A stretch of DNA of 64,000 nt from Perna viridis (GCA_037379345.1 CM074518.1:18910001-18974000), one strand, 5' to 3'; shown: positions 1,663 to 51,000, counted from the stretch's first letter. Notes: generated by a model not told the origin, from the letters alone. Made by a program: numbers and translations.

Positions 1663-1723
1663 CACGCTACCACCTGGTGTTGAACAGCCACTTCTTCCAG
1701 AAGAGTGATATCCCCGTAAATGC
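1663..1723 (-). CDS. Unknown gene: internal exon (RHLRGYHSSGRSGCSTPGGSV)
   Basis: CTTTTTAG acceptor, GTG|GTGAGT donor, phase 2-0. Confidence 0.75.
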
Positions 1724-10749: not shown

Positions 10750-11121
10750 CATATATAAGCAATTATCAATATATAAAAAATCTTATTCAGATAAAAAACA
10801 ATAAATTATTCACAGTTATGATATAATAATTATTGATTGACAAGTACTGACAACAATCTTAAATCTTAAAAAATCAATTCTAATGTTCTAAAATCAAATT
10901 AATTTAAAAATTTAATATCTGCTTAAGATCTATACTTATATAATGTATTAAATGATTGAATAGTATAACTAGTTTACCCACAAAAAAAAACCTCTAAAGA
11001 ATAGAATATATGTACTGCATATAATCTGAATTAGAAAAAAAAAAGAATATTTATACTGTCAATGTGATATGTTTATGGTTAAGAATGATGTTTGACAGCC
11101 AAAGAAACTGAATAATGATGA

Positions 11122-11500
11122 AAGAGTAGTCAAGGGAACCAAGGTTACAGCGGTAGTCAAAAGAATGTAATTCAGGGACAAAGACCAGACATGGAAAACA
11201 GACATACACAACAAAGACCATAAAGTAACTAAAATCATACATACAAAATAACAAAAGCAAATGAGCAACTCGGACTCCACTAAAAACTGGGAGAATGGAC
11301 CAAGTGCACTGGTAGGGTAAGCGTCCTCTGCTTTTCTAGAAACACCCGCCGAGTTGATCATAAAAAGTCAAGTCCGGGGTAGACAAACGAGGAAAGGAAA
11401 ACTATGACCCATTGAATAAATCAGTTTTCATGGTGCAGATCGATACACCATAACAATCCACAAGTTCATGAGGATGACCAAAAAATTTCTGTAGTGAAAA
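11122..11500 (-). mobile_element. 3'-end copy of the Penelope-like element
   Basis: High similarity to ~56942-57320; same spurious peptide (SAGVSRKAEDAYP). Confidence 0.85.
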
Positions 11501-21052: not shown

Positions 21053-24000
21053 CTGAAATACGATTCCAAATTACCATATGCTAATCATTACATATTACGA
21101 AAAATTCAAAAATAAAGTATTCTGTTTTTCTGGCTAGGCCATGTCATTTAAGTTATGTACATCACATTTCAGTATTGAAAATTTCTAAAACATCAGTGGA
21201 ATATCATTGCAAAATCTTTCCCCTTATGATTTTCAATCGTAAGTAAACGATCCGAGACAAATAATTAATTTAAAAACTCTATATTTAAAACTTTCATCGG
21301 ATACATGTACGTTACCCTATCATGACTTATGTAACTTAGCATATACATGAGAACACGAAAAGTATGTAGAACTGAAATCTCATTAGATAAGACAAAGACA
21401 ATGCAGAAAGAAAAAAAAAAACGCACGGAACAAATATTTGATAATCAACCTATTCGGACGATGGAACACAAGGACCAGATCTACTAGAAAACTATTAATA
21501 AAATAGGAGATGTGGTATAATTGCCAAACGAATGTGGCATCCTCCAAATGCCAAGCAACGACCAATCCACCAAATATCAAGCAACGACTAATCCACCAAA
21601 ATGCCAAGCAACGACCACTTAAACTTCTACAGGTCACCACACCGTCTTCAATAATGGGCAAAACCCATACCATAAAGCAAGCCGTAACAGGTCCAAAAAT
21701 TACTGAAAACCACTATGATACCTTCCGAGCTTAAATTCAAAACCCCTGTCTTTTTATAATTAAACTGTACAATGCTTAAATGTTTGTCGCTTACCCCTGT
21801 TATTTCCCATGAACGGGTATTAATGTGAATATATAAGAAAATTATAGTTGCTATAATAGCTAGACCCGAAGGTACAGCAACTAAGATGATAATTAAAGGT
21901 CCATCAAAGTCACTCCAGTCCACGCCAACATCTGGTGATGGTCTCTGTGTTACTGCCACGATGGGCTTTGCCACCTAAAACGATAGAAATACAGTTATAA
22001 GGAGATCATTGCAAGCTGCATCCTTACCGAAAAATGTCACGATAGAGCAGTAACAATATTCAATAAGTTTATTCAATGTATAGTAAGATAATCGAATAAC
22101 CGAACTTCTTGATCTGATTGAATTTAAAGAGACGAGATTGCAGTTTTACGCATAAGAGCTAGATGTTCACTATAGCATAAAGGAACTATACACCCGTGTG
22201 AAAAACATTCGTATTGCCTGATAATAATAATAAAAAACACGTTCTTACGAGAACATGTAATTACAACAAGAAAGACAAAAAATAAAATTACACACAGAGA
22301 TTAGGAGCACGAACCTTTCACACAAATAAAACCAACCAAAAAATAAAATAAAATAAAGTGAAATAAAATAAAAAATAAAGCAGGATTGGAACAGGTCCTC
22401 CGGAACCGTAAGTAGTTTTTGCTTCTTATGAGACACTTGACATGCCGCCATGCTGCCAATACAACTTGTTTAAGTTCATGGCAACAAGGGAAACACAATG
22501 ACATACTTACAGGATAACCAATAGCTGCACTCAACTGTAAATCTGACAATGTCTTGTATGTATTCTCAGCATCAGTTGCCGGAACAACGGCACCATCTTT
22601 GTATACTTCAAATGTTACATCTACCGAAATACCGTCGGTTCTCTTGATATCTGTTATCTGTAATTGAAATATTTTGGTATGCAAGACACTTGTTCATAAA
22701 TTCCATATTGATATAAATCGGTTTATCTGTTGACTTTTTGTGGATGAGATGCATCGTAAATAACGAATATTACCAGCCACAAATTTATTTCAATCAGCTA
22801 ATACTTTGTTTAAAAAGGCGTCCACTAACAAGGCATTCCTCACTGCTTCTTTTACAAAAGTGTGATTCGAACAATTAATGTTTTATGGAAGAAGGCATTG
22901 TATACATAGAAACATACCTTGACATCTACGCCAGTTCCACTTTCCCGTTTCTCCTTAGCAAATCTTTTCCGACGTGATCCACTAGCTTCAATATAACTCT
23001 TTTGAAGACCTTTCCGAAATAGACATTCTTATATTTTAATCGTCACTTATTAACATTGCAAATATACTTCAAATAATAGTCAAACCAAGAATCTTTTAAG
23101 TAAACCATTACTTTTAACTTTTTAGAGAAGGGGGATGTATATAGTCAGAGTTTTAGGTAAAGGAGGGGGCAAAACATTCTTGACATAATCACCGGTAATG
23201 ATCCGAAGTGATCCGAATTTGCTAGGGGGATTGGGGGCATGCTACCCCAAGAAAATTTGAAATCCTGCATTCTGAGGGTGTCTTGAACAATTTTTCAATA
23301 CCAATTCTGTACTGGATTTGTACATCTAATGTTTTGGTTTGAATACGTTTTTGGTTTATATTATTTCAGACATTGAAATTCTAAAAAGTATACATGTACA
23401 TACAAGACAAAGGGGAATGTGTTTGTTCATTAGAAAGCCAAATTTATAGTAATTCTTGTTTTATACACGTTGCGTTTAAGAAGGTCCTAAAAATGTACAT
23501 TATGTTATTATATCAAAGTAACGTTATTGGTGTCAACATAAATTTGTTCAATATCTTTTCATAATAATAATTGAGGATATAGACGTATACCTTCCTCAAT
23601 GTTCTTTTTGAATTCAGGACTGTTGACATCAACGTTTTCATTAACACTTAGTGTCATCATAAGTCGGTTGTCTGCAGGTGGTGTTATAGATGAAGTTGTA
23701 ACCTCGGTTGAAGACATTGTTGTAGTTGCTCTACTTGACACAGCTGTAGAAGTTGCGATAACTTCTACAGTTGATGGGGCAGTGACTGTGGCAGTTGATA
23801 TTAACTCCGATGCTAGAGGAGTCTGACTTACAGCGGTAGTTACTACGGACGTAACAATCAATGTAGATTCGTCTATAGATTCTAAATTTGGATTAACTGT
23901 TAAAGATACTTCATCCAGAGTTGAAGTCGAAGCTTCTGAAGTCCAAGATGGAACAGTCGTTGCCTCATTTACAGTTGATGTCTTGTCGATGAAAAAGGTT

Positions 24001-27000
24001 CCTTGTACAGATATTGAAGTTAAGGAGAATGTAGTTGACATTGTAGAATTTCTTTTCAATGATGTTGAATATTGACTGAGCGTAGAAAGTACCCTTGTCG
24101 ATGATGAATGTTGACTGAGAATAGAAGATAATTCTGTTGATGATGAACGTCGATCAAGTGTAGAAGGGATTTTCGGCATTGTTTGGTTGACGGTTAGAAC
24201 TGTATCTTTCAAAGATGAAGGTAAACTTGCAACAATAGTTTGTTCCTCAGATGTTGAATATTGAATAGCAATAGAGGTCGTTTCCTGCAATGTTGAAGTT
24301 GGAATAATTGTAAAAAATCCTTCCGACGCCGACGTCGTCGTACTTGATAACATTTTAGACAATGTTTCTGATGTCATTCTAGTAGGTATTATTCTATGAG
24401 TTCCTTCCGATAACATTTGTGTTTTATTGATAGAATTAGAAATGATTGAAAACGATTCCATTGATACTATGGGTGTAAAAGATAGATATGTTGTTTTTAC
24501 TTGGTCTGTTGATGAAGGGTTCAAATTGACCAATACAGAAACCAAGTCCACTGATATTGAAGTTTTAATGAATGATGAAGTAGTTTCTTGTATTATTGGA
24601 GCTGTATTGATCACAGGTGATACTCCCCTAGAGTAAGAAGAAGATGTTAAAGATATATCTGAAGTTGTCAGTATTTCACTAACAGAAAAAGATAGTTCTG
24701 TATAAGGCATCTGTATATTTGTAGAGGAATATACAACTTCAGATGCTGCCGAAGTTAAAATAAGTGCTAAAGTCGACGCCTCTTTTTCTGTTGCAGTAAA
24801 AGCAGGACTAGATGGAAACGAAAAACTAAAACTTGAAGGCAGTGAATTAATGATTGATTTTCTTATTGATTCGAATGTTGAAATACTGCCTATTAACTCT
24901 GATTTAAATGGAGATACTTCAAAAGTTGTATTTAAGCCAGGTACGTCAGACAGTAGTGTCAAAACATAACTATTTACTGGAATAGTGAAAACATCTAATG
25001 TCTTTGATGTTTTATCAATAGAGGGTAAACCCACTACTGAGTTCAATGTTCGATTTAGATTAAGACTAAACTCTGAAGATGTTACTTTTTCTGTCGTCGA
25101 TATTATTTGTAACTTAGAAGATGCAACTAAATCTGATGAAAGACTTGTCGTTTTCTGTACAACAGAAGAAAATAAGTCTGATGTAGCTTTCAGTGGGTTT
25201 AATGATGACAAACCCCATGAGAAAGCTGTTGTCGATTCCGTGTTTTGGATTGTTGTGTGGAAAACAGAGGATAGATTTCTTTGAACGCTGGATGTAAAAC
25301 TGTTGAGGCTTATTGTGGAAGTTGTCATTTCTGTTGATTCTGAAATCCAACTTAATGAAAAGGTTTCCAGTAATGATGTTACTGAGACTTGGTTGATTGA
25401 ACGAAACAACGACCTAGGTGTTACAGTTGATAAGTAATTAGGTTCGGAAAATAGTAATGTATTAGATGTTTGCAGTCCCTCACTTGGAAAAGTAAATATC
25501 GTTCCGATCAAACTTGAACTGTCCGTTTCAGTATCACTTGAGTGCAAATTTTTAGCTGAAGTGCTCATAGGTAAAAAGTCAAACGACGTTGTATTTAATA
25601 TTCTTGTGGAAAGGTTCGAAATGTCATTGATTAACAGGGTGTCCATCGGTGAAATTGAGAAATATAATTTAATACCAGACGATTCAACATATGAGGTTTT
25701 AACGGTAGTCTTTGTTAAAGGTTCTCCTATTGCAGATGATGTGGACACGGCAAAGTGTGATATTGCAAAATCTGTGTTGTTTAAAACTAACTGCGATTCT
25801 AAAGCAATGCTAGTTCTTAAGGTGGTAGGAATTTGTTTAGATTTTGATTTAAATGCATGAGGTGAAACTAGGTGTGTGAAATCAGGAGTGGTTTTGATGT
25901 AAGTGGCAACCTGTGTTGCCGTCATTTGAATAAAACTCCTGACGTCTGACGGTCCTGAAATTACTGCCACAACATTCACGACCTACAAAGAAAGAACATA
26001 TATACTTTTATATGGTTCCTTTAAGAGCATATGTATACAGCAAATTATTATTTATTTGAATTAATTTCGGTGTTGTGCACATTTTCGAGGTTTCCCGGGC
26101 AACTCTTATATGTAGATTAACTACTGATATCATTAACCAATGGGAAACGGGAACATCACACTACCATTAACATCTAAAAACCCGATATTCAAAATGACAT
26201 AAGAGCCAGACTATCTTATACCTTATTTGCCGTGCGTTTGCAGCAAAACAAAGCTTTAAAAAGAATCAGACAAATGTGAAAAAAAAACAGAAACAGTCAT
26301 GTCAAAATCCCATCGATCTGACAATATTACTTCACTCAAGGATAATAAAGGTCCATTATTAGGTCCCTGCGTCACTGCATTTGTTTAGAAATCTTTCAAT
26401 AAAATGTTAGAAACAAATTATTTTTTTGACAGAATTATCTGTCCCTGAAATGTTCATTTTAATGCATTTCATTGAAATTATAACTCGACCAAAGTGATTT
26501 TGAAAATCTTGTCTTTTTTTTTTTTCATTCTGATGCAGCAAATATTGTTTTGTTTTCATAACATGTTTCACCAACTGTCTGATTCTTAAAAAATGACACT
26601 GAAGCACATTTCGGATTTCGTTTCAAATCTTTCACCTACCGGATAACCTATGAGTTTACTGAGTTCCACAGATGACAACTTGTTGAATATTACTTCTGCT
26701 TCCTCTGCTGGTATAATGATACTTTGGTTGTATACTTTAAAGAAGATGTTAACCTTGCCATCTGCATTCCTTTCTATCCCTGTTATCTGTAAGGTAGGTG
26801 TATAAAAATTGCACATAAGGATAATATTTGGCATTTAAAAAAAAAAATAAGTTGTCAAAGTTTTCTAGATGAAAGGTAACGACAAAACAGTACGGTGAAT
26901 GTTAAAAGAATGCCCAGAAAAATTATGTATAAAAGATAAAGAAATTTAAAGAGGATTGAAATTTGTAACTTCGTAAATGTACAACCTTCACTTCGATTTC

Positions 27001-30000
27001 GTCGCTTGATTGTCTTTTGATTCTTGCAGAGCGTTTTCGTCTGGTAACAAGTGCCTCTAAGAAGCTTTGTCTAAGACCTATGGCAAAATTAAAACATTGC
27101 AATAATATGATACTAAACAGTGCAAGTTTTGTTTCAAAATTGTTAGTAATGTATCACCAATTCTTCAATTCACGAAGACCATTGGAAAACAGTATACAAG
27201 GTATTCACAATGTTTAACACTGCTAAATATGCATCAGCTAAGACAGTCATTAATATTCATAGTAAGAATAAGTAATAGGTTTGATTTATAAAGGATATGG
27301 AATCTGTGACTGATCTCCTATTGTTGTGGGACCTTGCTGAATGTGTGTTTACACTAGCTTGTTGTTAGGGCGACCTCTGAAGGTATTTGCTGTTTTTTTT
27401 AAATAAAATTATACGTTTGCTGTTTTTCAACGTATCCGTTCTTTTTTCTATCATGTATCTGAATAAGTACATTTAAATGAAATTTACGGAAAACATACCT
27501 TCTGCAACTTGTTGTTTGAACAAAGGATCTGTGATATTTATGTTCGTTGCTACATTTAAAGTTAATACCAATCTATTATCTGTATGAACTATACTGCTGG
27601 TTGACGTTGATTTGCTAGTAAATCTATCGTGTCGATTAGCTGTTGGATGTAGAACTGTTGAGGAAACGAGAATCTGCTGTGTTTGTGATCTTGATACGTT
27701 AGCGGAGTCAATGGACGATGTCTTTATTAAATTCATCGTCGATTCAAGACTTGAGAGTTGTTTTGACGATGCTTGCACCAGTATAGAAGATGTATGCAAC
27801 ATTTCTGCTGTATTATTCTTAATGGAATGTAAAGTTGTTGTTGATAGATTTTCGACCGATGTCATGCTAAAGACTCCTGGTATAACTGTGCTAGACATAT
27901 TGGACCGTCGCATAGTTTTCACTGCAGAGGATTTAAATACTGGCATGCTTCTTGTCGTTATTGACGAGACAGTATGCAATACATTGGTCTTTAATAAAAC
28001 ATCGGATAATGATAAACTCATTACAGGAGAGATTGTGAAAAAAGAAAACCCTAGCATTGATTTATCTGCCATCTGTGATGATTTCAATATTGGCATGCTG
28101 GTCAAAAATGGGGTTTGAAACAGTGATGACGTTAGGATTGGCGTAACAAAGAAATGCATTGTAGATGTTGATAATCTTTTTAACCTTTGCGTTCTAGTTG
28201 TAAAATAAGACGGCAAATCTTTCGCTGTGGTTACTGACGTTTTCGACATTCCAAATGAAGACCTGCTTGAAACTAGTACAGAGTTAGACATTGAAGCCGA
28301 TTCCAATACTTGCGTGGTTGTCATGTTTTCTATTATTGAAGACTCGAATGTTGGTGTACTTGGTGATATTGACGACCTGGGTATAGAACTATTGAAAACA
28401 GATGAAACCGGAATATCTGTCATGGTAGTTGATTCAGACACTGGGATATTTGTCAATTTTAAGGCATCAGATGACCATAAAAGAGACGATTCAAACAGTA
28501 ATGATTTCTCAAATCCTTGCATACTGGACAACAATAGTGATATTGTTTTAAGTTTAGACATTTCTTTGGTTGTGATTTGTGGTAATTCTATTGAAATATT
28601 AGACTCAATGAATGGTTCAGTATTCGACATGCTAATCTCTGGTGAAAATAGAGACACCGACATACTGGTAACGATTACTTCAGTGTTTGGCTTTTTTGAA
28701 ATTGATAACTTTTCGGAGGTCTGCAAAATCGTCGAACCCAAGGACTGAAACATAGACATACTTCCAGTATGTAATGTTTCGGGCATTGATACAATTTTGT
28801 CTGCTGAGGATTTGAATTTTGTTTCGGTTGTGGACGGTGAGGTATGGAATGTAAGTATACTGCTTTTTGGGTGGAAATTTGGATTGATACTGAGTGATGA
28901 AACATTGTTGAGCAACGGAATACTGGAAAGTATGAAAGATTCGGAAATTGGTACAGCCAATGCCGACGATATTATTGATATCGGCATACTTGACAAGACG
29001 GGAGTTGAGAGTGATGGCCAGATATTTGATGATACCAAATATCCCGACTTTCTCACTGAGAGTGACTCATAATTAGCTATTGACGTTATGAGTGGTCCCG
29101 TTCCTGACGTTAATCCTCTTATTGACTGTGACTGTCTCGTATGGAGCCATTCTGTCTCAATAAACTCACTCAATGAGGTTTTAAAAGTGGATTGGACGAT
29201 TGAGGGGTTGATATATCCTACCAAAGTTGTTAGTGAAAGTGTTGACACTGGAATTGACTTCTTTATATTTGTAGATGATCCGAACTCGAGCATAGTCGTT
29301 GATTTCACTGATCCCGGCATGATTATTGATAATGATGTAAACAGTGTAGTGACATTTGATTGCAAGACTGCTGATGCCGCAAGCATTGATGGAAAAGTAA
29401 CCAAATCAGTCGGAAAAGTACTGTTTAATGAAAGCAATTCTGACTGAATCTTTGATGTTATTTTTGTTTCTGTTAGCATTGCAGTGCCTGTAAATGTTCT
29501 TGTTACAGACTGAACTGTTTGTGTCCGTATATATTCGGAGCTAAATATTGGATTTGGGTCGAGTAATTCAGAATAAATCGTTTGTGATGATTCTAACTCG
29601 AATTGTGACTCCTTAATTAAATCTGTCAAATGTTTTGTTCTGAATGTTTGTAGAATCGAGTGAAACTTTGGAGTTGAATTGAACGATCCTGATATGATAG
29701 ATGAATATAGTGAAGACTTAGTCATCAATGTTGAAAGTACTGATTTTGACCAAAGAAATGTTGAATTGAAATTCTCTGATTGATTTCTTATCACTGATGA
29801 AGATAATTCAAGCATTGGTGATGTAAACAGCAAACGTGACTCAAAACTGTGTGGTTTAATTTGTGATTGTGAATCTAACTTTCCTGCAGATTTACTGGAT
29901 CCAGACTCTAAAAAGAGTGTTGTAGTGCCCGACTCTTGGCTTGGTACCGATGAAAATGATTCCGAATCTAGCATAAGTGTCGAATGAAATATTTCAATTG

Positions 30001-33000
30001 GAGAGAGTGATTCCAAATTAAGCGTTGGTGATGGGGTTACAGAATCAGAAATAGATAATGCTGAATTAAGCGCTGTCGATGCAGGCGTTGATGCTAGAGT
30101 TAATAAATGTGACCCTTCATTAATTGTTGATTCTAAACTAGGCGCAAGTGATCCTGACCAGATCGACAATACTGAAATGAGTGATCTTAACTTGGAGTGT
30201 GATATTGAGGTTGGTGATCCAAGTATCAGTGCTGATGTAAGATTATGTCTTTGTGTTGATGGAGGAAAGTCTGACTCCAATCTTGGTGTTAAAACTAGTG
30301 CTTTTGACACAAACATTGGCATTGAAGTAAATAATTTTGACTCCAACATTAGTGTTGATCCTGATTTCAGTTTTTGTGGCAATGTGAATTGTCCTGAGTC
30401 AGCCGTTGACTCAAGTATTGGTAATAATGTGACTGAACCAGAACCTTGAATTGCTTTTGAGGTCAGCGATATTGACTCAAGCGTTGATGTTATATTAGTT
30501 TGATCGGATCTAGTTATAGATGTGGACTCAAATGATGCTGAATTAAGATTTAATGCTGTTTTGAGTGTGTCTGGCCAAAGAACAGACATTGAATTTGGTG
30601 AAACTGTTTGAATAATTGATTTTGATAAAAAATGTGATCTTGAATCGTACATTGTTGTCGAAATTCTTGGTGTTGACTCAAAAGACGTTGAAAGCCTTGA
30701 ACTTCGCATCACGTATGATGTATATAACATTAATTCCATAATGCCAATCGATCCATATCCTGACTGACTGTTTTGGGTTGTCAAAAAACTACTAACATCT
30801 AATGATCTAATCCCTGCTGCAGTTACTGCCTTAACAACCTGAAGCAAACAAACAACTATTTATGTTTTGAATCCTAAAATACCCACATTTTCTGCTCTGT
30901 TAATAAAATTGATTTAAGTTTCAGAATAGTTTTAGTATAATTTAAAAATAAACACATTCAATGAGATGTCCTTTGCTATCAAATTTAAACTAGGAACCAT
31001 TGACATTTAAAAAACAAATGCATCCACATTATTGGTACAAAAATGTACTGTTCACAGACTATATCAATTTATTCTTTTCTATGCCAGAGCTTGCCGAAAC
31101 TACGCAGACTTTTTGTATTGCACTAGAACTCTAACAAATAGACTTCTGGAACCGGGGTATGTTGCTACAAGATTGAAGTAATCACTACAGAAGTTCTATG
31201 GTCGTCATCATGAACTCACGGATCGTTATGGTGTATCCATCTGCACCATGAAAACTGATTTATTCAACGGGTCATAGGTTTCCATTCCTCGTTTGTCTAC
31301 CCCGGACTGGACTTTTTATGAGCAACTCGGCGGGTGTTTCTAGAAAAGCAGAGGACGCTTACCCTACCGGTGCACCTGGTCCATGCTCCCAGTTTTTAGT
31401 GGGGTCCGAGTTGCTCATTTGCTTTTGTTACTTTGTATGTATGATTTTAGTTACTGTATGTTCTTTGTTGTGTATGTCTGTTTTCCATATCGGGTCTTTG
31501 TCCCTGGATTACATTCTTTTGATTACCGCTATAACCCTTGGTTCCCTTGATTACCCTTTCTACAAACTTTCTACACTTCGTTGGTTGTGACGTTGCTTTT
31601 ATTCAATATACTCTACAACATTCAGTAATGTACCAAAAAAAACCAAAAAAAAAAAAAAAAAAAAAACACAAACGAACAACATAAAACCTGACATGAGAAA
31701 GCATAAAACACTTACAGTGAATCCAATATCAGTGGACAGCTGATTATTTGACAGCTTTTGGAAGGTGTTGACAGCATCATTAGCCTGGACAATGGTTCCA
31801 TTGTTATAAACCTCAAATTCAACATCAACATTTGTATCTCTAGTTCTTTTAATATCTGTGACCTGTAAATCGCAGAAAACTTTATGACACAGATCTAATG
31901 GAAATAGCTAAAAAAAGTTTGGAAATAGTTAACGATAAAACGCAATATTAAGATGATAATTTTACAAACTGTTTTAGCATTATAAATAAATTGTTCCAGC
32001 ATTTGTTTCTGTATGGAATGGATCAATGGATCAAAGCAATACTAGGTATTTCCAGTAAAATTCAGTTAGTTTATTGGGACCAGAATTTAACAGATACCGG
32101 TTGTTTGCTCAGTACAGCTACTTTGTGGGGGCACATTTCATAAATCTCGATTCATTTTTCCCGCTATATTTGTTTTAATACTATTTCTGTCGCGACTGTC
32201 TCCTTTGAAATTAACGCGTGAAGTTTTAATATCAAAACTAAAACCAAACTTGTATTCCTGAACTTGTGTATATTGTGAATAAGGATATAAAAACAAACCT
32301 TAACGTCTATATCGCTCCCTACTGCTCGTCGATTCCTCAGTGATCTCTTCCGACGAACAGTCTGTGCCTCAATGAAACTTTGCTGTAAGCCTAAAATTAG
32401 TTTTTCATATATTGAATGGTGCATTTAGAAAGACAATACATAATACTTCACAGTTAATCTTTAAAACTCTATAAATTGTGTTAAATATTAAGCATTTCCT
32501 ATGTTTGCTTTGGTTTTCCATTCATTCATCAAAATGACACTAAATCAAATGGTAAAATAAAAACAAGTAATATATTTTGACATTCGTTTTTAAAGTATAT
32601 ATCATACATTATAATAAAAAAACATATCTTTTTGTATATGTATTATACGTAATTGTTTAAACCTTATGTCGTTTACTCCATATTACATGCTTTTTATCGC
32701 ATCCTAGACCTATATCGCAACCCAACTCGGAACACGTTTGAAGCATAGTTGAAATATACAATGTAACGAACATGCACGTCAAAGTCTGTATCCCATGACA
32801 TATCAATCCTCGACCTACAGGCGGTGGCCCTTTGGGTAATATAGGAGGTTTGAGTTGATATTGCATGCGATACATATTTCGACATGTTATATTCAGTATA
32901 TACTGAGTATACTTGATATACCTTTACGTTCAAGACATCTTAACAGTCTTTATCTAATCAATGTCTGTTTTATGAGACGTCTTGAATATGTTTAAATTGT

Positions 33001-42000: not shown

Positions 42001-45000
42001 CATATTGTTTGATAGCAAAATATTGTTAGCTTTGTCCTTAATATTAAGAAGTCCTTTAATAAACTTTCAATTTAACATAAGGTATGTCATGTGCAATGTT
42101 TATTCCAATTGTTTTTAATTTGTTTGTTTGTTAACGTTTCCTTAAGGGAGTTATTTTGGGGGTATTTTCATTCAAATATTCTGTGGAAGATTCAGATGAC
42201 ATTACACAATTCGTTCACATTGTTTTTCATTTGAATATGAACGCACCTTGACTTCTACATCACTCTCTATTGCTCGTCGTTTCCTTACAGATCTCTTCCG
42301 ATGGACCGTTTGTGCCTCAATGAAACCTTGCTTTAAGCCTTTGAATAAAATATGTCCAATTAATCTTTTTTTTTTTTCATCAGTTGTTACCTTACTGTTT
42401 TTAGCACGTAAAGTTGTTCAATGTTGTGTACATTATCGTAATCACTATTCAAGTTTTTTGTCTTGTATATAAAAATAAAACAATACAACATTTCACTGAT
42501 AAAAACTTCATAACAAGTCAAATAAAACAAAATATGCAATGGTAGTTTTGTAAGAGTAATCAAGGGAACCAAGATTCTAGCATAAATCAGAAGATTGTTT
42601 ATCGAGGGACAAAGACCAGACATGGAAAACAGACGGAATATAAAAAGAACAAAAGAGTAACAAAAGTAAAGAGCAACTCGGACTTCACTGAAAACTGGAA
42701 GCATGGAGCGGGTGCAACGGTTGTGTGAACTTCTTTTGCCCTTAAAAGTGTCGTCTACTGCAATTAAAAGAATTTTTATTAATATTAAAGTAAGGTTTTC
42801 CTACCTGCTTCCACTTGTTGTATGAACTGTGAACTGTAAATATCGACATCCTGTGGTACATTTAACATAATAGATAGTCTGTTGTTTGTAGGTAAGGGTT
42901 GTACAACTTTTGATAGGGTAGAATTTATGAGATCTGGTATCATCGCTGGAGTTGATTTATTAGCGTCCAAGTTAAAGGATGTTTTGGAAGATGGAGTTAC
43001 CAATATTATTATTGGTGTCGAATGGACTTCTGAGTTTAATATCGTGTTCATTTCCACTCTTTCAGTTAATAACGTTAAAAGTTCTAATGTTGCTGTCATT
43101 GGTGTTGTTGGCTTTATTGTATTATTAGATATCTTCGTTACAATAAGTGAATCTTTCATTGTTGAGAATGATACAATAGAGTCGGCATTTGCATTTGACG
43201 ATATTGCGGACTCTGATGAAGCTTGTAGCTTTGATGAAGACTGTGATGTATTGCTAGATGGTATCATAGAGTTTTGAAAATCGCTGGATGCTTTTATTGA
43301 CACTAACGTGACTGCTGTTAGCTCATGCGGTGATAATTTCAAAGACTCTACTCCATTTCTTAATATTGTTATTGTTTGAGGTGTAGCTGTCTGTAATGGT
43401 ATAGACTCTTGTGAATCTAGTTGTGCTTCCCACGTTGTAACATGCTGTTGTTCCCGTTTTAAAGAAGGTATTAACAAATGTGTATTTGTAGCCGATGTTG
43501 TCGCCTCTGTAGTTGATGTGGACATCGAAAAAGAGTCTAATGCAGTCATTGGTTGTATTTTTAGCTCTGGTTTATCAGTTGACATTTGGATGGATTCTGT
43601 CGAACTTTGGGCTTCTGTATTTGATGTAATAGCTGTAATTGGCAGCGGAGCAGCCGTTGTTGTCTGGATAGACTGTAATGTTGTTGTGTATGTTGGTATA
43701 TACTCTTGTACAGATATGGTTGATTGTATAGAGAATGATTTAAGTGCAGATATAGACGTTGATATATATTTTTGTATACCTATGGATGTCAGTGAAGGTT
43801 TAGCTAGTGTATGTGTTACGAAGCCTTTGGTAGTTTGAAGTACTATTGAAGGTGTTTGCGTAGCACTGGAAGCTGGTATTGACATCGGAACATCTCTTTT
43901 GCTACTAGTAGTCTCTTGGTGTAATGATGATGTTGTTATCGACCCTAATGAATTTGGTGTTAGTATAGACTCCGAATTTGGCATACTTAGGGATATTTGT
44001 TCAAAGACATCTGTAGCATTCGGTGATTCTTTAAAACCTTTTATTGTCGTTGATGTTAGTAAAGATTTTATCGCACCTGTTGTTAAAAGTTTGAACTCTA
44101 TGTTTTCCGTCAATGATTGCATTGCGTCTTGCGTATATGAAAATGTTGGTATTACCTTTATTTTTAAGGTTGATGGTGGTATTGACTTAACTGCATTCGA
44201 TAACGGTAAAGACGTAAATGTAGCTATAGACGTTAATTTTGATTCAAGTGCAACTGTCGATGATTGTCTTAAATCATGCATGGCTGCCGATATTGGTCTG
44301 AACTCTATTGCGGTTGTCACTGACGGTATAGACTCCAATGTAGATGTTGATGTTTGTATAGACTCAAAGCTAGCCATTGTCATTAGCATAGACTCTAGAT
44401 TGGATGATGTTTGACCAAAGGCTAGTAAATCTGTCTTTGATCTATCCGAGACTTTTGTAGCTTTCAATATTTGGCTATGATCTATCGAAGTTTCTGAAGT
44501 TCTAGACTTCAATATAAATGCTGATATAAGAGAAGACTGCGAAATTGCTGTCGATTTTTGTGCTGTGTCTGGTGTTGCTGTAGATTTTGAACGTGCTACT
44601 GATGTTGACATTGACCCAAATATACCTGGTACTGTTTGTGTAGACCAAAATGTGACTGTCGATGTTGGTAATGACTCAAATGTACCAGTTTGCGTGTGTA
44701 TTGACTCTAATGAATCTATTGATAATTGCATAGAATCATGTATGGTGGTAAAGGATATAGACTGTAGTGTAGCTGTCCTGGTTGGTCTCGTCCCTAGTGT
44801 TGTTGTCGATGTTAGTATTGACTCAAATGTATTTTTTGATGTATTAATTGTCTCCAGCGTTGCTATCGATAATTGTGTAGACTCATGTGTGAATATCGAT
44901 AATGAAAGAGGCTGTAGTGAAGCTGTCGGTGTTGGTTTTAGATATGTTGTAACTGTCGTTGTTGGCCTTGATTCTAGAGGTGTTGTCGATGTAAGCTTTG

Positions 45001-48000
45001 ACAAATATGGACTTTTTGATGTTTCTTTTGGCTCTAATGAATATATCGATGATTCGATAAACTCGTATGAGGATTTCAACAGTATCGTCTGTAGTCTAGC
45101 TGTCGTTTGCCTTGCATCCACTGTTTTTTTCGATGTTGATATTGCCCCGAATGTAATTTTGGATGTATGTGTTGACTTTTGTGTATCTATTGATGATTCT
45201 TTAGAATCACGTGTGACTGTCGCCGATATAGACTGTAGTGTAGGTGTCCTGGTTGGTGTTGTCTTTAGTGTTGTTGTCAATGTTGGTATTGACAAAAAAT
45301 TGTTTGTTGATGTATTTATTGACACCGGTGTAGATATAGATGATTCTGTAGACTCTTGTAAAGCTGTCGATAATAACAAAGGCTGTTGTGAAGCTGTCGA
45401 TGTTGGTTTTAAAATTGGTGAAGCTGTGTTTGTAAGCCTTGACTGTAGTGCTGTTGTTGATGATTGCATTGACCAATATGCATTTGTGGACGTTTTCCGT
45501 GGCTCTAATGAATATATCGATGATTCAATAGACTCCTGTGTAGCTTCCGACGAAGCAGTCTGTAGTGTAGATGTCGTTGTAGCCATTGCCTCTAGTGTTT
45601 TTTTCGAAGTTGTTATTAATCCAAATGTATTTGTTAATGTAGCTTTCGTAATTGGTCTTATCTCTAGTGCTGTTGTTGATCTTAGTGGTAGCCCAATTGT
45701 ACCAGTTTGCGTTTGTATTGATCCTTGTTTAGCCAGTGACGATTCAATAGACTCATGTGTGGCTGTGGATAATGACAGAGACTGTTGTGTAACTGTCGAT
45801 GTTTGTTTTAAATCTAATGTAACTGTCGTTGTTAACAACGACCCTAGTGCTATTCTCGTTGTCGGTATGGACAAAAATGTACCAGTTTGTGTTTTTATTG
45901 GCTCTAGTTTAGCTATTGACGATTCTATATAACTATGTATGGCTGTCAATGACTGTAGTGTTACTGTCGTTGTTGGTCTAATCACTGGATCTAGTATTGC
46001 TGTTGAGAGTTGAATAGAATCTAAAGTAGATATCAATACTTTTCTAGAATCCAGCGTGGCTTTCGATTGTTCTATTTGATCTAGCATCGCTGTAGTTGAT
46101 GGTATAGATACATAAGCCCATGTTGCAATTGACTCTGGTTCAGCTTCAAAAGTTGTAATTGGCACTCGTGTTGCTTCTGATATAGAATCTGTTTTAGTTT
46201 TTGATTTGGGTAAGACGACTAAGTTAGTGTTTGGTAATGCTATTAATTCTGATATATGTTTTGATGTTTGGTTGGATTTTCTCATAGCTATTGAATCGAG
46301 TGCAGCTTTGGAAAATGAGCGTAATTCTGTTGAAAGTTTTGGTGTTGTTTTTGAGACTTGTATTGCTGTAGATGTTTGTATAGACTCTAATATAGTCGTG
46401 ACTGCAGTTATAGATTGTGTTGAACCTGTGGATGTTATTAGAAAGTCTTGCTTATCTATTGATGGTGATATTGTGTGCTCTTGTATTACTGTGGATATTG
46501 GTATAGGCTTTAACACTGCTGTTGATGATCTAACTATCTCTTGAGCGACCCTTGACTTTATTGATAATTCTGATTTAGCACTTGTCGGTACTTCATTTTC
46601 TTGTATATCACTGGAAGCTGTTACTGGCATTCGAGTACCTTTCGTACTATTGGACTTCGTTGTAGCCATGAATATTGAAAAGGATTCCAGTGTAATTGTG
46701 GGTGATAAAGCCGTATGCATACTTAAAGAGTTTGCAGAAGTAACTTTGGCTCTAGACACGGAATCCGAATTCATCGATGATGTTATAGACTTTGATATTA
46801 TTGCTGATGTTAGTAAAGACTTCAGTTTAGTATAGAAAAATGTGATAGACTTCAATGTGGCTGTGACAGGTATTGACTTTGGTGTATCTGTTGATGTTTG
46901 AATTAAATCTAAAGTAGTTTTGAATGTTTGTTCAGAGTCTGTTTTTGCAATAGACGTTGTCGTGGAATCTTTTTCAAATTTTGATACTATTGAAGAATCT
47001 TCTCTAGCACTAGTTGATATTGAAATGTTTGGTATAGCAATTGATGATAATGAAACTGATGTAGATTTGAATACAAAGATGGACTCTGATATGGCTGTGG
47101 AAGCTGTTGTTGGCACAGTAATAGTAGTGAATATTTGTAAAGAATCTCGTGTAGATATTAAAGATGTTATAGCATTTGCTAATGCTGTGTATACCGATGC
47201 AGTAATTAATTTTGGCTGTGACTGAAGCGTAGCTTTTGCTTGGGTTATGGGTGTTGTTACTGACTCTGATGTAGCTGTCGATGACAATGTGGACTCTAAA
47301 ATTAGAGCGGGCATTATTGTGGATTTAGATTTAGCTATTGTTGTTTCTAATAAAAGTGATAAGTTATTTGAAATTATTGCTGATTCTTGTTCATCGAAGG
47401 TATTATGCGTTCGCAATATGGGATTTTCTGTCATGTGACGTTTTGTATTAAGAAACACATTTTGATTATTGTATGATGTGGCATAAGTTTGCTGTGTATT
47501 TTCTTTTGTTTCTTTTAAATTTAAACTTTCTGTAGAAATATAGTTTGTTTTGTTAGATAAATGCGCTGGTGAAGTATTAACAAGAAGCGGTAAAGTTTGA
47601 TTTAATTTGTATGAAGTTTGCATTGTTTTCATTTTCTGTCCAAATGTGATTGAATCTCCGGATGGCAAAATTGAAGCATCTGAATGAGTCTTTTGAGATA
47701 ATATGCTTGTCCTCTGTGTTGTTAGCGATGGTGTATTTGCAGAATCTCTTGGCTGTGTTGTCTGACTGACACTTGTGTTATACTGTGTTTTTTCAATTGC
47801 CGTGGATTCAAATTTAACGTTTTGATTTATAAAAGTTGTAATGCTGTTTGATGGTGAGATATCTTGAATTTCAACTATTCTCACAGGTTTATGTACACTC
47901 AAAGTAGTTTCCATCAAAGGCGACGTGACTACTTTGAAATTGTGATTTGTTACAACTGTTAACGGTAATGTAATTGCTTGATCTGTTTTAGATAAGAGCA

Positions 48001-51000
48001 AATTCTGCGTCATGGAATTATATGTCGGCGAATGTTTTTGGATAGTAATGTCATTGGGTGATGATGAGTGTGTTTGAATGGTTATGCGACTAAATGTTGA
48101 CGAGTGTGTTTTAACGGTTTTATCATTAAATATTGATTGGTGAGTTTGAGTGTTTTTTTCATTGAATATTGAAAGGTGCGCTTGAATAGTTGTGTTATTA
48201 AATGATGATGGATGTGTTTTAATGGTTGTGTCATAAATCATTGATTGGTATGACTGTTTTGTTATATAATCGGTAATGGACGGTGATATTACTTGGGTTG
48301 TGATTGTTGAGTTGTTTGAGGTAGATGTCGATTCGAGCAGAAATTGTGTGTTATTCTCATTTGTTTTAAATTGAGTATGTACCTCTTTTATAGATGTTGC
48401 AATTGAACTTAGGTCTTTTGAATTTACTCTCTGAGTTGTTTCGGGTACTATGGTCTCTTCTTTGGATGATGATGGGTCTGAAAGTAAAGGGAAGCCCATT
48501 TATAATTATGTTACTGTTTTCTTTTTAACTGTAGCGCTGTGCTATAGAACACTTACATGAACAAGAACCATATGACAAGCAATGGGCGTATTAAAACATG
48601 GAACAACCTAGAGGTGTTTTTCCTTTTAACAATGTCCCCTCTGACTACCAACAGATATATCCGTACAGAAAATATTTAGCAGAGCATGTACTTGATCTGA
48701 AACTGAAACATGATTGTATTTGATAATCTGACCCAAACTTTGTTGCTGTTTACATTTTCTTTCTAACTTTTTGAATTTGACTAAAAACAAACAATAAAGT
48801 TGTCCTTCTATTGACCAGCATGTCAATTTAAAAACCACTTATCTCCAAATGTGGTACATCTTAATTTAGTTTTTTTACACTGTGTGTGAAATCGATAAAA
48901 AATGCACAGCGTAATTATTTTATGATATTAAAATATTCTAAAACAGAAAATACATTTTAATTCGAATTATCTACGGCCAGCCTTGCTTTACATTTAACAT
49001 TTCATAGTGCACTTTCGGTGGGAAAGTTTTGGTGAAATAAGGCCTATATTAGTCAAAAGATCATGATGAACCTTACAAATAAAAAAAAGAACTAAATAGG
49101 GTCGTTCATTTTATATTTCAGAATATGTATTCATATTCCTATACACCTTGTTTCCCAGAGCTTTGATTAAATGTGTACTTTTATTTTTATCTGAACGTAT
49201 AAAAAACAGACCATTGTTTTTGAGTCGTCAGAAACTAAATCAATTCAATAGAAAGACATTTTAACTAAAACGGTTGACAATCAAAATGCAAAGGTTTTCA
49301 TTGATTACTTACTTGCACAGCTGTCTAGGGCGTGTCATTAACTTAATACAAACATTAATTTGTACACCGTGAAACAAAACTTCTATCAATGTTTAATAGG
49401 AAAATAAATATGAAAAACGTATGTCTAAAGAATAATCCATGGAAAATATCAATGTTAACTGAATAATGAAGCATAACATAAGGCACAATAACCAATCTTA
49501 CATGTAGCAATATCTGATTGTACTGATAGATAACCTACGGAGATAACCTTGTCACACGTTGTAATTGATCGTAGTCATACTGTACAATTTAACTGAGTGA
49601 CGCTGAACAACAGGTGCACCACTGGATGCAGTTGTCCATCGTTTTAATGAAAGGGGACAGATTTGATTTGTTTTGTTTTTGTTTGTTTGTTTGTTTGTTT
49701 TGTTTTTGTTTTTGTTTGTTGGTTTTTTTTTTTTGTGAAAAGGCATGAATGCCTTACGTTTTATGTGTATAAAAGTGGTTTTCATATAAAAGTAGCCATA
49801 CTAGCTATTTGACCCTCACTTCTTAGTCATAAACGAAAACAACTCTTACAAATTATTGGAACGTTTATATTCAGCATTTAACATCAATCTCATGTAAGCA
49901 TCAACCTTACTTGGATTGATTTCATTCTGTTTCAAGTGAAAGCTTGATAGGCTTTGGTGAAATTGAATATGATACAAACATATCACTGATTTTAGGAGTT
50001 GTGACCCTTAACTTAGGTCTACCACCTTAAGTAAAACTATGCTTGCACAATTTTGTTCCTACGTCATCATCATGGCCACCAAATATTAAAGATATTGATA
50101 CAGTGGCAGTCAATTTCTTACCTCTACAAAGTAGTAAATAACAAGTTTATATAGAAGTAAAGTGGTTGTCCAGGACAGACAAACTGGGGTCTATAACTCA
50201 TTTTACAGGTTCTCATATATGTTTCCATGTCATGTGGGAAACAGCGTATTAGATTGAAGTTTAGGTTGTGCTTATATCACTTGACTTGTATGCAGCATTA
50301 CAAAATTTACATTTAATGCATCAAAACTGGTCAAATAGACAAACATCTTGCATAACTACGAGTATACCATCCGATAAAACTTGATGCAGTATATAACATT
50401 TGCAATACACTTTTTACCTTATGATTGTTGTAGGTGGCATCATTTTAATGTGGAATTACATAGTTACTTTTGTACTCATATCTGTAATATTCTTGCGGTT
50501 TCACAATAAATTTTGATCGACCAATATAGGTGAACGTCAATTATTACATATATTTTTATACTTTCGTAAACTGGCCAGGCGATGGTTTAATATGCTACAT
50601 ATTAAGGATAAGCAGTGTTCTTAATAACAATGTCAGTCACACTCTTTTTCTTTGTGGCTGTTGATATTTCGAAAGATTTTTAAAAACAAAAATGTCGAAG
50701 AGCATGTTAACAGTACAAAATAGGACCGTGTAGGAACAAGGATCTTCTATCAGTACTAAATAGAATTATTCTAGTATGATAATCTATAATTATCTATGTT
50801 TATCCATTCAGAAAGAAAAAAACAACTAATTCCTTTTACCAAAAAAAAATGTTTTTTATGCGTAATATGTAGGTAATATAATTAAAAGTGTTTACATACA
50901 TAGATTGATGATTGATTTTATTAGTTGTTTCTATTTTTTTCTTGATTAAATTTTGACTCCAAATTTGTGTGAGTTAATTGAGAAAAAAAATGGTGTGTTC

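What the first reader, a model, noticed from the sequence alone, without database searches (positions are those of the whole stretch)
21795..48477. Giant membrane mucin built from five modules, each linked by a SEA-like domain with an internal convertase cassette
Seen in sequence: five repeats of a strict three-exon module (giant S/T exon, 92-nt exon, 147-nt exon). Each rebuilds a ~115-aa domain of the form NRLxxxLNV..D+.S..F.QQVE.GL.QS++EA...RRKR..R.RR.....++VK+TDIKR....VDV.FEVY..G.++.A.DA...F.KLS...LS..IG+PV. Established knowledge: SEA domains in MUC1-type mucins are cleaved yet stay non-covalently associated. KIAA1549/UPF0606 proteins, as I recall, have only a membrane-proximal pair of such domains after one S/T region. 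Inference: here SEA-like 'clasps' are interspersed between five separate 800-1,900-aa glycosylated segments. The ~7,000-aa precursor would be cut into six or more subunits held as a chain that can be shed segment by segment, a break-away glycocalyx or mucus tether. I know of no description of this architecture.
Basis: partly seen in the sequence, partly recalled or inferred. Interest (0 to 1): 0.88.

Follow-up and report, generated by a model that had tools for sequence, protein, structure and literature searches.

The report
Five-module KIAA1549-like membrane glycoprotein gene
A mussel-like bivalve carries one very large gene for a membrane glycoprotein related to human KIAA1549. Its sugar-carrying stretch and its small protease-cuttable SEA-like domain are repeated five times in a row, an unusual expansion of a protein family whose function is still unknown.

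Summary
On the minus strand, five modules follow one another. Each has a giant Ser/Thr-rich exon (797-1,890 codons), a 92-nt exon and a 147-nt exon, all with AG/GT borders and the same phases. A transmembrane exon (21974-21795) and cytoplasmic exons follow.

Intron-free contigs from three independent data sets join modules 1, 2 and 3 at exactly the predicted sites. The links 3-4-5-TM and the 5' end were not tested.

Each module rebuilds a ~115-aa domain. The Mytilus edulis orthologue of module 5 passes Pfam's KIAA1549 threshold. Its model is confident (pLDDT 91-98) and has a beta-alpha-beta-beta-alpha-beta fold. The best structural matches are SEA and SEA-like domains: Nup54 Z 11.3, PCDH15 MAD12 Z 10.4, MUC16 SEA Z 8.8, and Gpr126, Notch and dystroglycan near Z 7.4.

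The double R-x-K/R-R cassette lies in a flexible loop between helix 1 and strand 2. A basic site at this position is conserved in all but one of the homologue domain copies inspected, from cnidarians to sea urchins. Human KIAA1549 is furin-cleaved in such a domain.

So this is a lineage-specific expansion of a known family, not a new kind of system. Abalone homologues already have two spaced modules. Cleavage, continued association of the halves and stepwise shedding remain inference. The complex predictor was unavailable.

The parts
51752..52055 (-). Candidate first coding exon. It starts with ATG and a hydrophobic N-terminus (MRLISISPLYLKCLLFF...), continues Ser/Thr-rich, and ends at a CAG|GTAAAA donor in phase 1.
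   Evidence: Read from sequence. The donor phase matches the phase-1 acceptor at 48477. It was not checked against RNA, and an internal acceptor near 51999 is also possible.
42805..48477 (-). Giant exon 1 (5,673 nt, 1,890 full codons; 35% Ser+Thr). It contains a ~157-aa repeat at 44754-45617. Its last 28 codons encode strand 1 and the first half of helix 1 of SEA-like domain 1.
   Evidence: The 3' junction appears in spliced contigs, and one 4,473-nt contig covers more than 4.1 kb of this exon.
42247..42338 (-). 92-nt exon of module 1: second half of helix 1, cassette HRKR-SV-RKRR, and the start of strand 2.
   Evidence: Both junctions are seen in contigs of all four runs.
41725..41871 (-). 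147-nt exon of module 1: strands 2-3 and helix 2 of the SEA-like domain.
   Evidence: Both junctions are seen in contigs: the upstream one in all four runs, the downstream one (to giant exon 2) in three (X1, X18, X19).
38874..41436 (-). Giant exon 2 (2,563 nt). It opens with the last strand of domain 1 (IEKGVTVAV) and ends with the start of domain 2.
   Evidence: Both junctions and the exon body are covered by contigs.
38570..38661 (-). 92-nt exon of module 2, cassette RRRR-SV-RERR.
   Evidence: junctions.
37973..38119 (-). 147-nt exon of module 2.
   Evidence: junctions.
33325..37702 (-). Giant exon 3 (4,378 nt; 34% Ser+Thr, 17% Leu; 33-66-nt repeats).
   Evidence: Its 5' junction (37973 to 37702) is seen in two runs. 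Its 3' junction is read from sequence only.
32299..32390 (-). 92-nt exon of module 3, cassette RRKR-SL-RNRR.
   Evidence: sequence only.
31716..31862 (-). 147-nt exon of module 3.
   Evidence: sequence only.
27499..30838 (-). Giant exon 4 (3,340 nt).
   Evidence: sequence only.
26986..27077 (-). 92-nt exon of module 4, cassette RRKR-SA-RIKR.
   Evidence: sequence only.
26640..26786 (-). 147-nt exon of module 4. It gives a weak Pfam hint to PF12877 on its own (E 0.056).
23591..25982 (-). Giant exon 5 (2,392 nt).
   Evidence: Its tail aligns to Mytilus P0046.
22918..23009 (-). 92-nt exon of module 5, cassette RRKR-FA-KEKR. It is 59% identical to the Mytilus orthologue.
22511..22657 (-). 147-nt exon of module 5, 67% identical to the Mytilus orthologue.
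21795..21974 (-). Exon carrying the last strand of domain 5 (VAKPIVAV), the conserved W-S-D-F-D/N-G-P motif and the single transmembrane helix (LIIILVAVPSGLAIIATIIFLYI).
20231..21055 (-). Large cytoplasmic exon. The acceptor is near 21055 and the 3' border was not fixed. It includes the motif PGKLVFSSDYIF shared with Mytilus.
1663..9595 (-). Further cytoplasmic-tail exons at about 9595-9302, 4342-4199 and 1728-1663. The 3' end of the gene was not found in the window or in the 20 kb beyond it.

Best explanation
This is one gene for a type I membrane glycoprotein of roughly 7,400-7,500 residues from the KIAA1549/UPF0606 family.

Its ectodomain is five tandem copies of one unit. Each unit is a long, Cys-free, Ser/Thr-rich segment that is probably unfolded and heavily O-glycosylated, followed by a ~115-residue SEA-like (ferredoxin-like) domain. 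The unit was multiplied by duplication of a three-exon, frame-neutral block. Modules 1-3 are the youngest; modules 4 and 5 are old.

Each SEA-like domain carries two R-x-K/R-R sites six residues apart in a flexible loop between helix 1 and strand 2. The most likely course is that furin-type convertases cut each loop in the Golgi, as shown for human KIAA1549. This would give six chains.

Strand 1 and helix 1 of each domain stay on the upstream chain, and the other three strands and helix 2 on the downstream chain. The halves probably remain docked without a covalent bond, as in cleaved Notch and GPR126. The cell-surface form would then be a chain of glyco-segments anchored by the last piece and its long conserved cytoplasmic tail.

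Shown here: gene structure, splicing of modules 1-3, family, fold, and position and conservation of the sites. Inferred: cleavage, association of the halves, glycan type and any shedding.
For: - Gene structure and phases.
- Spliced contigs from three independent data sets join giant exon 1, its two small exons, giant exon 2, its two small exons and giant exon 3 at the exact predicted GT..AG sites. The genome holds no second copy that could be a retrocopy.
- Family: the M. edulis protein P0004 is the orthologue of module 5 plus TM plus tail. It is 67% identical over the 147-nt exon. It scores 26.8 bits on PF12877 against a cut-off of 24. Nematostella and Acropora homologues found with the exon profile score E 1.3e-23 and 3.4e-19.
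- Fold: the AlphaFold2 model of P0004 has pLDDT 91-98 over the domain outside the cassette loop (residues 30-140), falling to ~73 over 141-150 and 63 in the cassette loop. Its order of elements is beta-alpha-beta-beta-alpha-beta. VIA-align gives Z 11.3 to Nup54, 10.1-10.4 to PCDH15/CDH23 membrane-adjacent domains, 8.8 and 7.9 to MUC16 SEA, 7.5 to Gpr126 SEA, 7.4 to Notch2 HD and 7.4 to dystroglycan. Foldseek's best E-value is 3.3e-4.
- All five window domains align without gaps to P0004, apart from a misplaced second half of the 92-nt-exon rows.
- A basic R-x-K/R-R site sits about 10 residues before strand 2 in all but one of the domain copies inspected in Hydractinia, Nematostella, Acropora, Batillaria, Haliotis, Saccostrea, Lytechinus and Mytilus. 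The exception is Batillaria's middle domain.
- dN/dS is 0.23-0.33 between modules 1-3 at dS 0.33-0.67, while their introns no longer align.
- Furin cleavage of human KIAA1549 in its SEA-like domain 3 was shown with dec-RVKR-CMK (PMC13570299). The motif is reported as conserved from human to placozoa (10.1101/2025.08.18.670743).
- Furin-cleaved GPR126 SEA stays together on gel filtration (10.1101/805515).
- The genome encodes many convertase P-domains and two PMT-type O-mannosyltransferase loci.
Against: - No protein-level data exist for this animal.
- Junctions for modules 3-4-5-TM and the 5' exon are read from sequence only.
- The window's own exons are too short to pass Pfam alone. The best is 12.3 bits.
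- The fold was predicted for the Mytilus orthologue of module 5, not for the window's own domains.
- The cut site is in a different loop from MUC1 and Notch, so continued association cannot simply be carried over from them.
- For human KIAA1549 the fate of the N-terminal piece is unresolved. No shed ectodomain was detected (PMC13570299, section 7).
- The complex predictor did not complete.
- Public Mytilus gene models start inside the last Ser/Thr exon. This could mean shorter products exist.
Confidence: 0.6

Rival explanations
1. Polyprotein precursor. The convertase cuts are real, but the halves fall apart. The gene would then mainly supply five soluble Ser/Thr-rich glycoproteins to mucus or matrix, leaving a short membrane stub that may signal.
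For: - The cut removes only one strand and one helix from each domain.
- The double site would excise a hexapeptide and may loosen the loop.
- The authors of PMC13570299 and 10.1101/2025.08.18.670743 consider secretion of the human ectodomain likely.
Against: - In a ferredoxin-like sheet, strand 1 is usually central (general knowledge, not measured on this model). That position favours retention.
- Both halves of the domain are under purifying selection in every copy. Simple linker sites would not need this.
- No shed ectodomain was detected from membrane-bound human constructs (PMC13570299, section 7).
- Cleaved GPR126 SEA stays associated (10.1101/805515).
Confidence: 0.2
2. Mostly uncleaved giant chain. 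The basic cassettes are cut rarely or only in the membrane-proximal domain. The SEA-like domains would serve chiefly as folded spacers or folding checkpoints between glyco-segments.
For: - In transient expression only a minor fraction of human KIAA1549 was processed (PMC13570299).
- The human domains 1 and 2 carry no furin motif (10.1101/2025.08.18.670743).
- MUC16 has many SEA domains that are mostly uncleaved (general knowledge).
Against: - All five copies keep both R-x-K/R-R sites with the same spacing, although synonymous sites between modules 4, 5 and the rest are saturated.
- The site is kept in all but one of the inspected homologue domains across four phyla.
- The loop has low model confidence and is probably exposed.
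- Stable low-level expression of human KIAA1549 gave efficient cleavage (PMC13570299).
Confidence: 0.12
3. More than one transcription unit. Internal promoters or alternative splicing would give shorter proteins, for example only the last module plus TM and tail as in the Mytilus gene models. The full five-module protein would then be rare or absent.
For: - M. edulis and M. trossulus models begin inside the last Ser/Thr exon.
- Junctions from module 3 to the TM exon were not tested.
- Whole modules are frame-neutral, so skipping them would keep the reading frame.
Against: - Modules 1, 2 and 3 are joined in contigs of three independent data sets, and only the canonical junctions were seen.
- There is an open frame and there are matched phases through all five modules.
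- Automated models often truncate at giant low-complexity exons (general knowledge).
Confidence: 0.08

Closest known systems
Human KIAA1549 (UPF0606; Pfam PF12877)
   Same: - Type I membrane protein with a long Ser/Thr-rich ectodomain.
- SEA-like/ferredoxin-like domains next to the membrane.
- A furin motif in a loop before strand 2 of such a domain.
- A single TM helix and a long cytoplasmic tail.

The homology rests on the Pfam match of the Mytilus orthologue. The human features come from PMC13570299 and 10.1101/2025.08.18.670743.
   Different: The human protein has one glyco-region followed by three adjacent SEA-like domains, and only the last has a furin motif. Here there are five domains, each separated by 800-1,900 residues of Ser/Thr-rich sequence, and each has a double site.
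Abalone homologues (Haliotis rufescens XP_046364164.2 and the H. rubra and H. asinina proteins, named after unrelated adhesins)
   Same: Same domain family, with spaced modules: a Ser/Thr region, a domain with a furin site, about 1,200-1,400 residues of Ser/Thr, a second domain with a double site, then the TM helix.
   Different: They have two modules, not five. The architecture is not described in any paper I could find.
Cnidarian and gastropod KIAA1549 homologues (Acropora palmata XP_074637811.1, Nematostella XP_048584954.1, Batillaria KAG5699447.1)
   Same: Same domain. Furin sites are present in the first and third domain copies.
   Different: Acropora and Batillaria have three adjacent domains directly before the TM helix. 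The profile found two in Nematostella, with a gap where a degenerate middle copy may lie. This is probably the ancestral layout. There is no long glyco-segment between domains.
MUC16 (CA125) and other SEA-bearing membrane mucins (MUC1, MUC3/12/17)
   Same: Membrane-tethered O-glycoproteins. In MUC16 many SEA domains alternate with Ser/Thr-rich linkers. The fold matches MUC16 SEA at Z 8.8 and 7.9.
   Different: - No Pfam SEA (PF01390) match.
- No G|SVVV self-cleavage motif.
- MUC16 linkers are short (general knowledge).
- The cleavage chemistry here would be convertase-dependent and in a different loop.
Notch heterodimerisation domain and human GPR126 SEA domain
   Same: SEA-like fold cut by furin in the secretory pathway, with the halves staying associated until force or ligand separates them (10.1101/805515). 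The fold matches at Z 7.4-7.5.
   Different: Those cuts lie between strands 2 and 3 and occur once per protein. Here the cut lies between helix 1 and strand 2 and would occur five times per protein.

Membership tests
KIAA1549 / UPF0606 (Pfam PF12877) | Match to PF12877 above its gathering score | tested here: inconclusive
   The window's exons were searched one by one. Only the 147-nt exon of module 4 gives a hint (12.3 bits, E 0.056; cut-off 24). The joined domain was not searched. The M. edulis orthologue P0004 passes with 26.8 bits. Nematostella and Acropora homologues found with the window's exon profile score E 1.3e-23 and 3.4e-19.
KIAA1549 / UPF0606 (Pfam PF12877) | Type I layout: long Ser/Thr-rich ectodomain, juxtamembrane folded domains, one TM helix, long cytoplasmic tail | tested here: met
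   The pre-TM motif F-N/D-G-P is shared with homologues from several phyla.
KIAA1549 / UPF0606 (Pfam PF12877) | Juxtamembrane domains with a ferredoxin/SEA-like fold | tested here: met
   Met for the orthologue. The model has pLDDT 91-98 and Z up to 11.3 against SEA-like domains. The window's five domains align to it gap-free.
KIAA1549 / UPF0606 (Pfam PF12877) | Convertase motif in the loop before strand 2 of the membrane-proximal domain, cleaved by furin | tested here: met
   The motif and its position are met in all five copies. Cleavage itself cannot be tested with these tools.
KIAA1549 / UPF0606 (Pfam PF12877) | Three adjacent SEA-like domains directly before the TM helix | tested here: not met
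   There are five domains, each separated by 797-1,459 codons of Ser/Thr-rich exon. I treat this as a difference in layout, not a failure of homology.
KIAA1549 / UPF0606 (Pfam PF12877) | POMT1/2-dependent O-mannosylation of the Ser/Thr region | not testable with these tools
   Only indirect support. The composition is like that of the homologues, and two PMT-family loci are present in the genome.
Canonical SEA domain (Pfam PF01390) | Sequence match to PF01390 | tested here: not met
   No hit for the window's exons at E up to 10 or for P0004 at E up to 0.01.
Canonical SEA domain (Pfam PF01390) | Beta-alpha-beta-beta-alpha-beta fold superposable on solved SEA domains | tested here: met
   MUC16 SEA Z 8.8 (rmsd 3.5 A, 103 aligned) and Z 7.9; Gpr126 SEA Z 7.5; TMPRSS-type SEA Z 5.6.
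Canonical SEA domain (Pfam PF01390) | G|S-V-V-V self-cleavage motif in the strand 2-3 turn | tested here: not met
   The turns read NGET, TGET, TRDT, NADGK and TDGIS.
Classical mucin (PTS) domain | Pro/Thr/Ser-rich tandem repeats | tested here: inconclusive
   Ser+Thr is 32-36%, but Pro is only 4-6% and Leu+Ile+Val is 22-27%. The repeats are degenerate: a 10-11-residue period and a ~157-aa repeat in exon 1.

The most novel reading that the evidence does not exclude
After processing, the mature protein would be a chain of six separate polypeptides held end to end by five split SEA-like domains. Each would act as a non-covalent clasp that opens under load. The cell-surface coat could then give way segment by segment, a serial mechanical fuse, and the release could perhaps be reported through the conserved cytoplasmic tail.
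Probability: 0.3. Interest if true: 0.75.

Novelty: new variant of a known kind. Interest (0 to 1): 0.5.

Why it matters
KIAA1549 is known mainly as the partner of BRAF in childhood pilocytic astrocytoma, and its normal function is unknown. Its SEA-like domains and furin processing were described only in 2025-2026.

This gene gives two useful pieces of comparative evidence. First, evolution has multiplied the pair 'glyco-segment plus cleavable SEA-like domain' as one unit. Second, both basic sites have been kept in every copy under purifying selection. This argues that cleavage inside the domain is central to the family's function.

The gene also offers a natural multi-clasp protein for testing whether convertase-cut SEA-like domains hold together. 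It also shows that public mollusc gene models of this family are truncated or misnamed.

Tried and rejected
- **Exon-by-exon Pfam scan of the window** gave almost nothing: one hint at E 0.056. There are no Pfam domains in the giant exons.
- **Profile of the domain alignment against PDB sequences** gave nothing meaningful.
- **Canonical SEA (PF01390) in the own genome** gave no exon-level match. The controls did not ring either, so this is uninformative.
- **The look-up of encoding contigs for P0004** found nothing on record.
- **Word-based searches:** P0004 found only Mytilus models. The tail of giant exon 1 found nothing. So module numbers in other mussels could not be counted.
- **Tree of the 49-residue half-domains** is unresolved. 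Only module 5 with Mytilus (94) and modules 1-3 together (85) have support. I could not decide whether the five modules descend from one or from several of the three ancestral domains (the Acropora domain 2 row was left out as too gappy).
- **The last ~250 residues of the Mytilus tail** were not found in the window or in the 20 kb beyond it.
- **ESM Atlas** gave a first hit at 0.83 to a 'SEA domain-containing protein'/PF12877 cluster. This is a lead only.
- **Complex prediction on the two halves of the P0004 domain** never ran. The tool was busy and was then declared unavailable. There is therefore no verdict on binding of the halves.
- **Rejected reading: a processed pseudogene or DNA-level deletion as the source of the intron-free contigs.** The genome has only these five copies of the exon.
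- **Odd joints at 42132 to 42553/42554** in two runs lie in an abundant interspersed repeat. I take them for assembly artefacts.

Full report
**What is in the sequence**

The minus strand between 48.5 and 23.5 kb holds five very long open frames. Their products are 32-36% Ser+Thr, have no cysteine, about 5% proline and 22-27% Leu+Ile+Val.

Each frame ends one base into a Gly codon at a GT donor. Each is followed by a 92-nt exon and a 147-nt exon with AG/GT borders. The next giant exon opens in phase 0 behind a pyrimidine-rich acceptor. One module (giant exon + 92 + 147) is therefore frame-neutral.

After module 5 comes a 180-nt exon (21974-21795). It carries the last strand of the domain, a conserved W-S-D-F-D-G-P motif and a single transmembrane helix. 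Cytoplasmic exons follow. They align to Mytilus proteins down to window position 1663.

A candidate first exon (52055-51752) has an ATG, a hydrophobic start and a phase-1 donor that fits the phase-1 acceptor at 48477. It was not verified.

From that ATG to the end of the TM exon the coding length is about 20.0 kb (about 6,675 codons). With a Mytilus-like tail the protein would have about 7,400-7,500 residues.

**Is it more than chance, and is it one gene?**

A profile of the five 147-nt exons finds exactly five places in the 723-Mb genome, all in this gene, with E 1e-24 to 1e-28.

I laid the contigs of four public runs on 37650-42900. All six predicted introns in that stretch are skipped at the exact coordinates, with GT..AG ends on the minus strand:
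- 42805 to 42338
- 42247 to 41871
- 41725 to 41436
- 38874 to 38661
- 38570 to 38119
- 37973 to 37702

One contig of 4,473 nt runs from more than 4.1 kb of giant exon 1 through both small exons into giant exon 2. Others link giant exon 2 to its small exons and on into giant exon 3.

Two of the runs (X1, X19) look like one data set filed twice, so I count three independent data sets. The runs are only guessed to be RNA. However, intron-free contigs can come only from spliced RNA or from a retrocopy, and the genome has no second copy.

Modules 1-3 are therefore parts of one transcript.

**What the domain is**

Exons were searched one by one by reference, and the joined step was left out. An annotated orthologue stood in for the joined domain.

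The exon profile, run against 1.84 billion representative proteins, found 26 hits. The best annotated hit is Mytilus edulis CAG2239036.1 (P0004, 907 aa). It is the orthologue of module 5 plus TM plus tail and is 67% identical over the 147-nt exon.

P0004 passes Pfam's KIAA1549/UPF0606 model (26.8 bits, cut-off 24; residues 39-139 on profile positions 18-115). Nematostella and Acropora hits match the same family at E 1.3e-23 and 3.4e-19.

The window's exon pieces align to P0004's domain without gaps, apart from a misplaced second half of the 92-nt-exon rows in the first alignment.

**Fold**

AlphaFold2 was run on P0004 with a 29-row alignment. It gives pLDDT 91-98 over the domain outside the cassette loop (residues 30-140), about 73 over 141-150, and 63 in the loop that carries the basic sites. 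The elements are:
- strand 33-38
- helix 48-69
- loop 70-83
- strands 84-95 and 98-107
- helices 114-133
- strand 137-143
- the TM helix at 161-192

Foldseek's best PDB match is the ferredoxin-like domain of Nup54 (E 3.3e-4). The VIA-align second look reads like a roster of SEA and SEA-like domains:

| Structure | Z |
|---|---|
| Nup54 (rmsd 2.0 A, 93 aligned) | 11.3 |
| PCDH15 MAD12 | 10.4 |
| CDH23 MAD28 | 10.1 |
| MUC16 SEA | 8.8 and 7.9 |
| CELSR1 | 8.2 |
| ACE2 neck domain | ~8 |
| Gpr126 SEA | 7.5 |
| Notch2 HD | 7.4 |
| dystroglycan | 7.4 |
| phogrin ectodomain | 7.2 |

Values under 8 are not decisive alone, but the consistency of the list and the top scores are. The Pfam SEA model itself does not match. 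The G|SVVV self-cleavage motif is absent from the strand 2-3 turn. 'SEA-like' is therefore the right term.

The last strand of each domain is encoded at the start of the following exon (IEKGVTVAV, VEKGVTASG, VVKAVTAAG, VVNVVAVIS, VAKPIVAV). Each domain thus spans four exons.

**The basic cassette**

All five 92-nt exons read R/H-R/K-K/R-R, two residues, R/K-x-K/R-R. That is two convertase motifs whose cuts would lie six residues apart. This confirms an earlier scan note on the same stretch (s1-751551). In the model the cassette lies in the low-confidence loop between helix 1 and strand 2.

I inspected domain copies in homologues from Hydractinia, Nematostella, Acropora, Batillaria, Haliotis, Saccostrea, Lytechinus and Mytilus. 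All but one, the middle domain of Batillaria, have an R-x-K/R-R site about ten residues before strand 2. Several have a second site.

Between modules 1-3 the domain-coding pieces show dN/dS 0.23-0.33 at dS 0.33-0.67, while their introns no longer align. Against modules 4 and 5, synonymous sites are saturated. The copies are old and kept by selection, cassette included.

The genome encodes many convertase P-domains and two PMT-type O-mannosyltransferase loci.

**What is already known**

Two recent papers describe human KIAA1549 (PMC13570299; bioRxiv 10.1101/2025.08.18.670743). They report:
- a type I membrane protein with an O-mannosylated Ser/Thr region;
- three AlphaFold-predicted ferredoxin/SEA-like domains;
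- a furin motif in a loop before strand 2 of the third domain, said to be conserved from human to placozoa;
- cleavage that is blocked by dec-RVKR-CMK.

They could not detect a shed ectodomain from membrane-bound constructs, so the fate of the N-terminal piece is open.

For GPR126, furin-cleaved SEA stays together on gel filtration. MUC1 and Notch are cut between strands 2 and 3 (10.1101/805515). The cut position here differs from those.

**How the layout compares**

A full-domain profile built from the homologues gives the following picture:

| Species | Domain layout |
|---|---|
| Acropora, Batillaria | three adjacent domains before the TM helix, as in human |
| Nematostella | two domains found, with a gap where a degenerate middle copy may lie |
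| Lytechinus | two adjacent domains |
| Saccostrea | one domain |
| Three Haliotis species | two domains about 1,200-1,400 Ser/Thr-rich residues apart |
| This gene | five spaced domains |

The spaced layout is therefore not unique to this gene. Five modules is the largest number seen.

I found no paper on invertebrate KIAA1549 proteins or on this layout. The abalone and coral proteins carry names borrowed from unrelated adhesins. The Mytilus models begin inside the last Ser/Thr exon. They are probably truncated, but I could not test that.

**Most likely mechanism**

Shown:
- one gene, with splicing of modules 1-3 confirmed;
- membership of the KIAA1549 family;
- five SEA-like domains, each with an exposed double convertase site;
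- a TM anchor and a conserved tail.

Inferred, in falling order of confidence:
1. Convertases cut each loop in the Golgi, by homology with the human protein and from conservation of the sites.
2. The halves stay docked, because strand 1 and helix 1 are integral parts of the fold and by analogy with GPR126 and Notch.
3. The resulting six chains form a tethered string that can part under load. Their sizes would be about 2,000, 930, 1,530, 1,190 and 870 residues, plus the anchor piece.

The Ser/Thr exons are more like the O-mannose region of the human protein than a proline-rich mucin domain. The glycan type is unknown. The main rivals are release of the pieces as soluble glycoproteins, little or no cleavage, and shorter transcripts.

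**Verdict**

The family, the fold and the furin site are already known from the human protein, and a two-module form exists in abalone. This is therefore a new variant of a known kind and is of moderate interest. The break-away chain idea is not excluded but is untested. The complex predictor was unavailable throughout the session.

Noticed in passing
window 42402-42760, 33035-33207, 31348-31558, 11119-11331, 56914-57153: A ~200-bp interspersed repeat occurs five times in the window, at 70-73% identity. Three copies lie in introns of this gene. In the transcript contigs its summed depth exceeds 20,000, so it is very abundant in expressed sequence. It also causes odd joints at 42132 to 42553/42554.
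   Followed up: partly
window 57224-61049, minus strand: A run of broken, overlapping ORFs gives weak reverse-transcriptase matches (RVT_1, E 6.7e-5 and 5.4e-4, both below Pfam's cut-off). This is a decayed retrotransposon upstream of the gene.
   Followed up: partly
window 23592-48475, the giant exons: Giant exons 1-4 share a weak 10-11-residue periodicity (z 3.5-7.3). Exon 1 also has a ~157-aa repeat (44754-45617), and exon 3 has 33-66-nt repeats. Exons 1 and 2 share about 260 nt at their 3' ends, and exons 2 and 3 share about 270 nt near their 5' ends.
   Followed up: partly
window 147-nt exons of modules 1-4 (e.g. 41871-41725): An N-x-S/T sequon sits at the same place after strand 3 in modules 1-4 (YTNGS, YNNGT, YNNGT, YNQS). 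It is absent in module 5 and in the Mytilus orthologue (YKDG).
   Followed up: no
public proteins P0004, P0045, P0046 (Mytilus edulis, M. trossulus LOC134682970): The Mytilus gene models start inside the last Ser/Thr exon and hold only one module. Given the five-module transcript here, they may be truncated. The Mytilus genomes could not be reached with these tools.
   Followed up: no
public proteins P0013, P0047, P0048, P0014, P0033: KIAA1549-family proteins of abalone, sea anemone and coral are named after unrelated proteins ('threonine-rich GPI-anchored glycoprotein PJ4664.02-like', 'serine-rich adhesin for platelets', 'streptococcal hemagglutinin-like'). The Acropora protein also has N-terminal immunoglobulin domains.
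   Followed up: partly
same genome, another piece (scan note s1-753433): An earlier first-stage note describes a furin-family protease on a mucin-like stalk with a predicted GPI anchor. It could be a candidate enzyme for these cassettes. I did not examine it.
   Followed up: no
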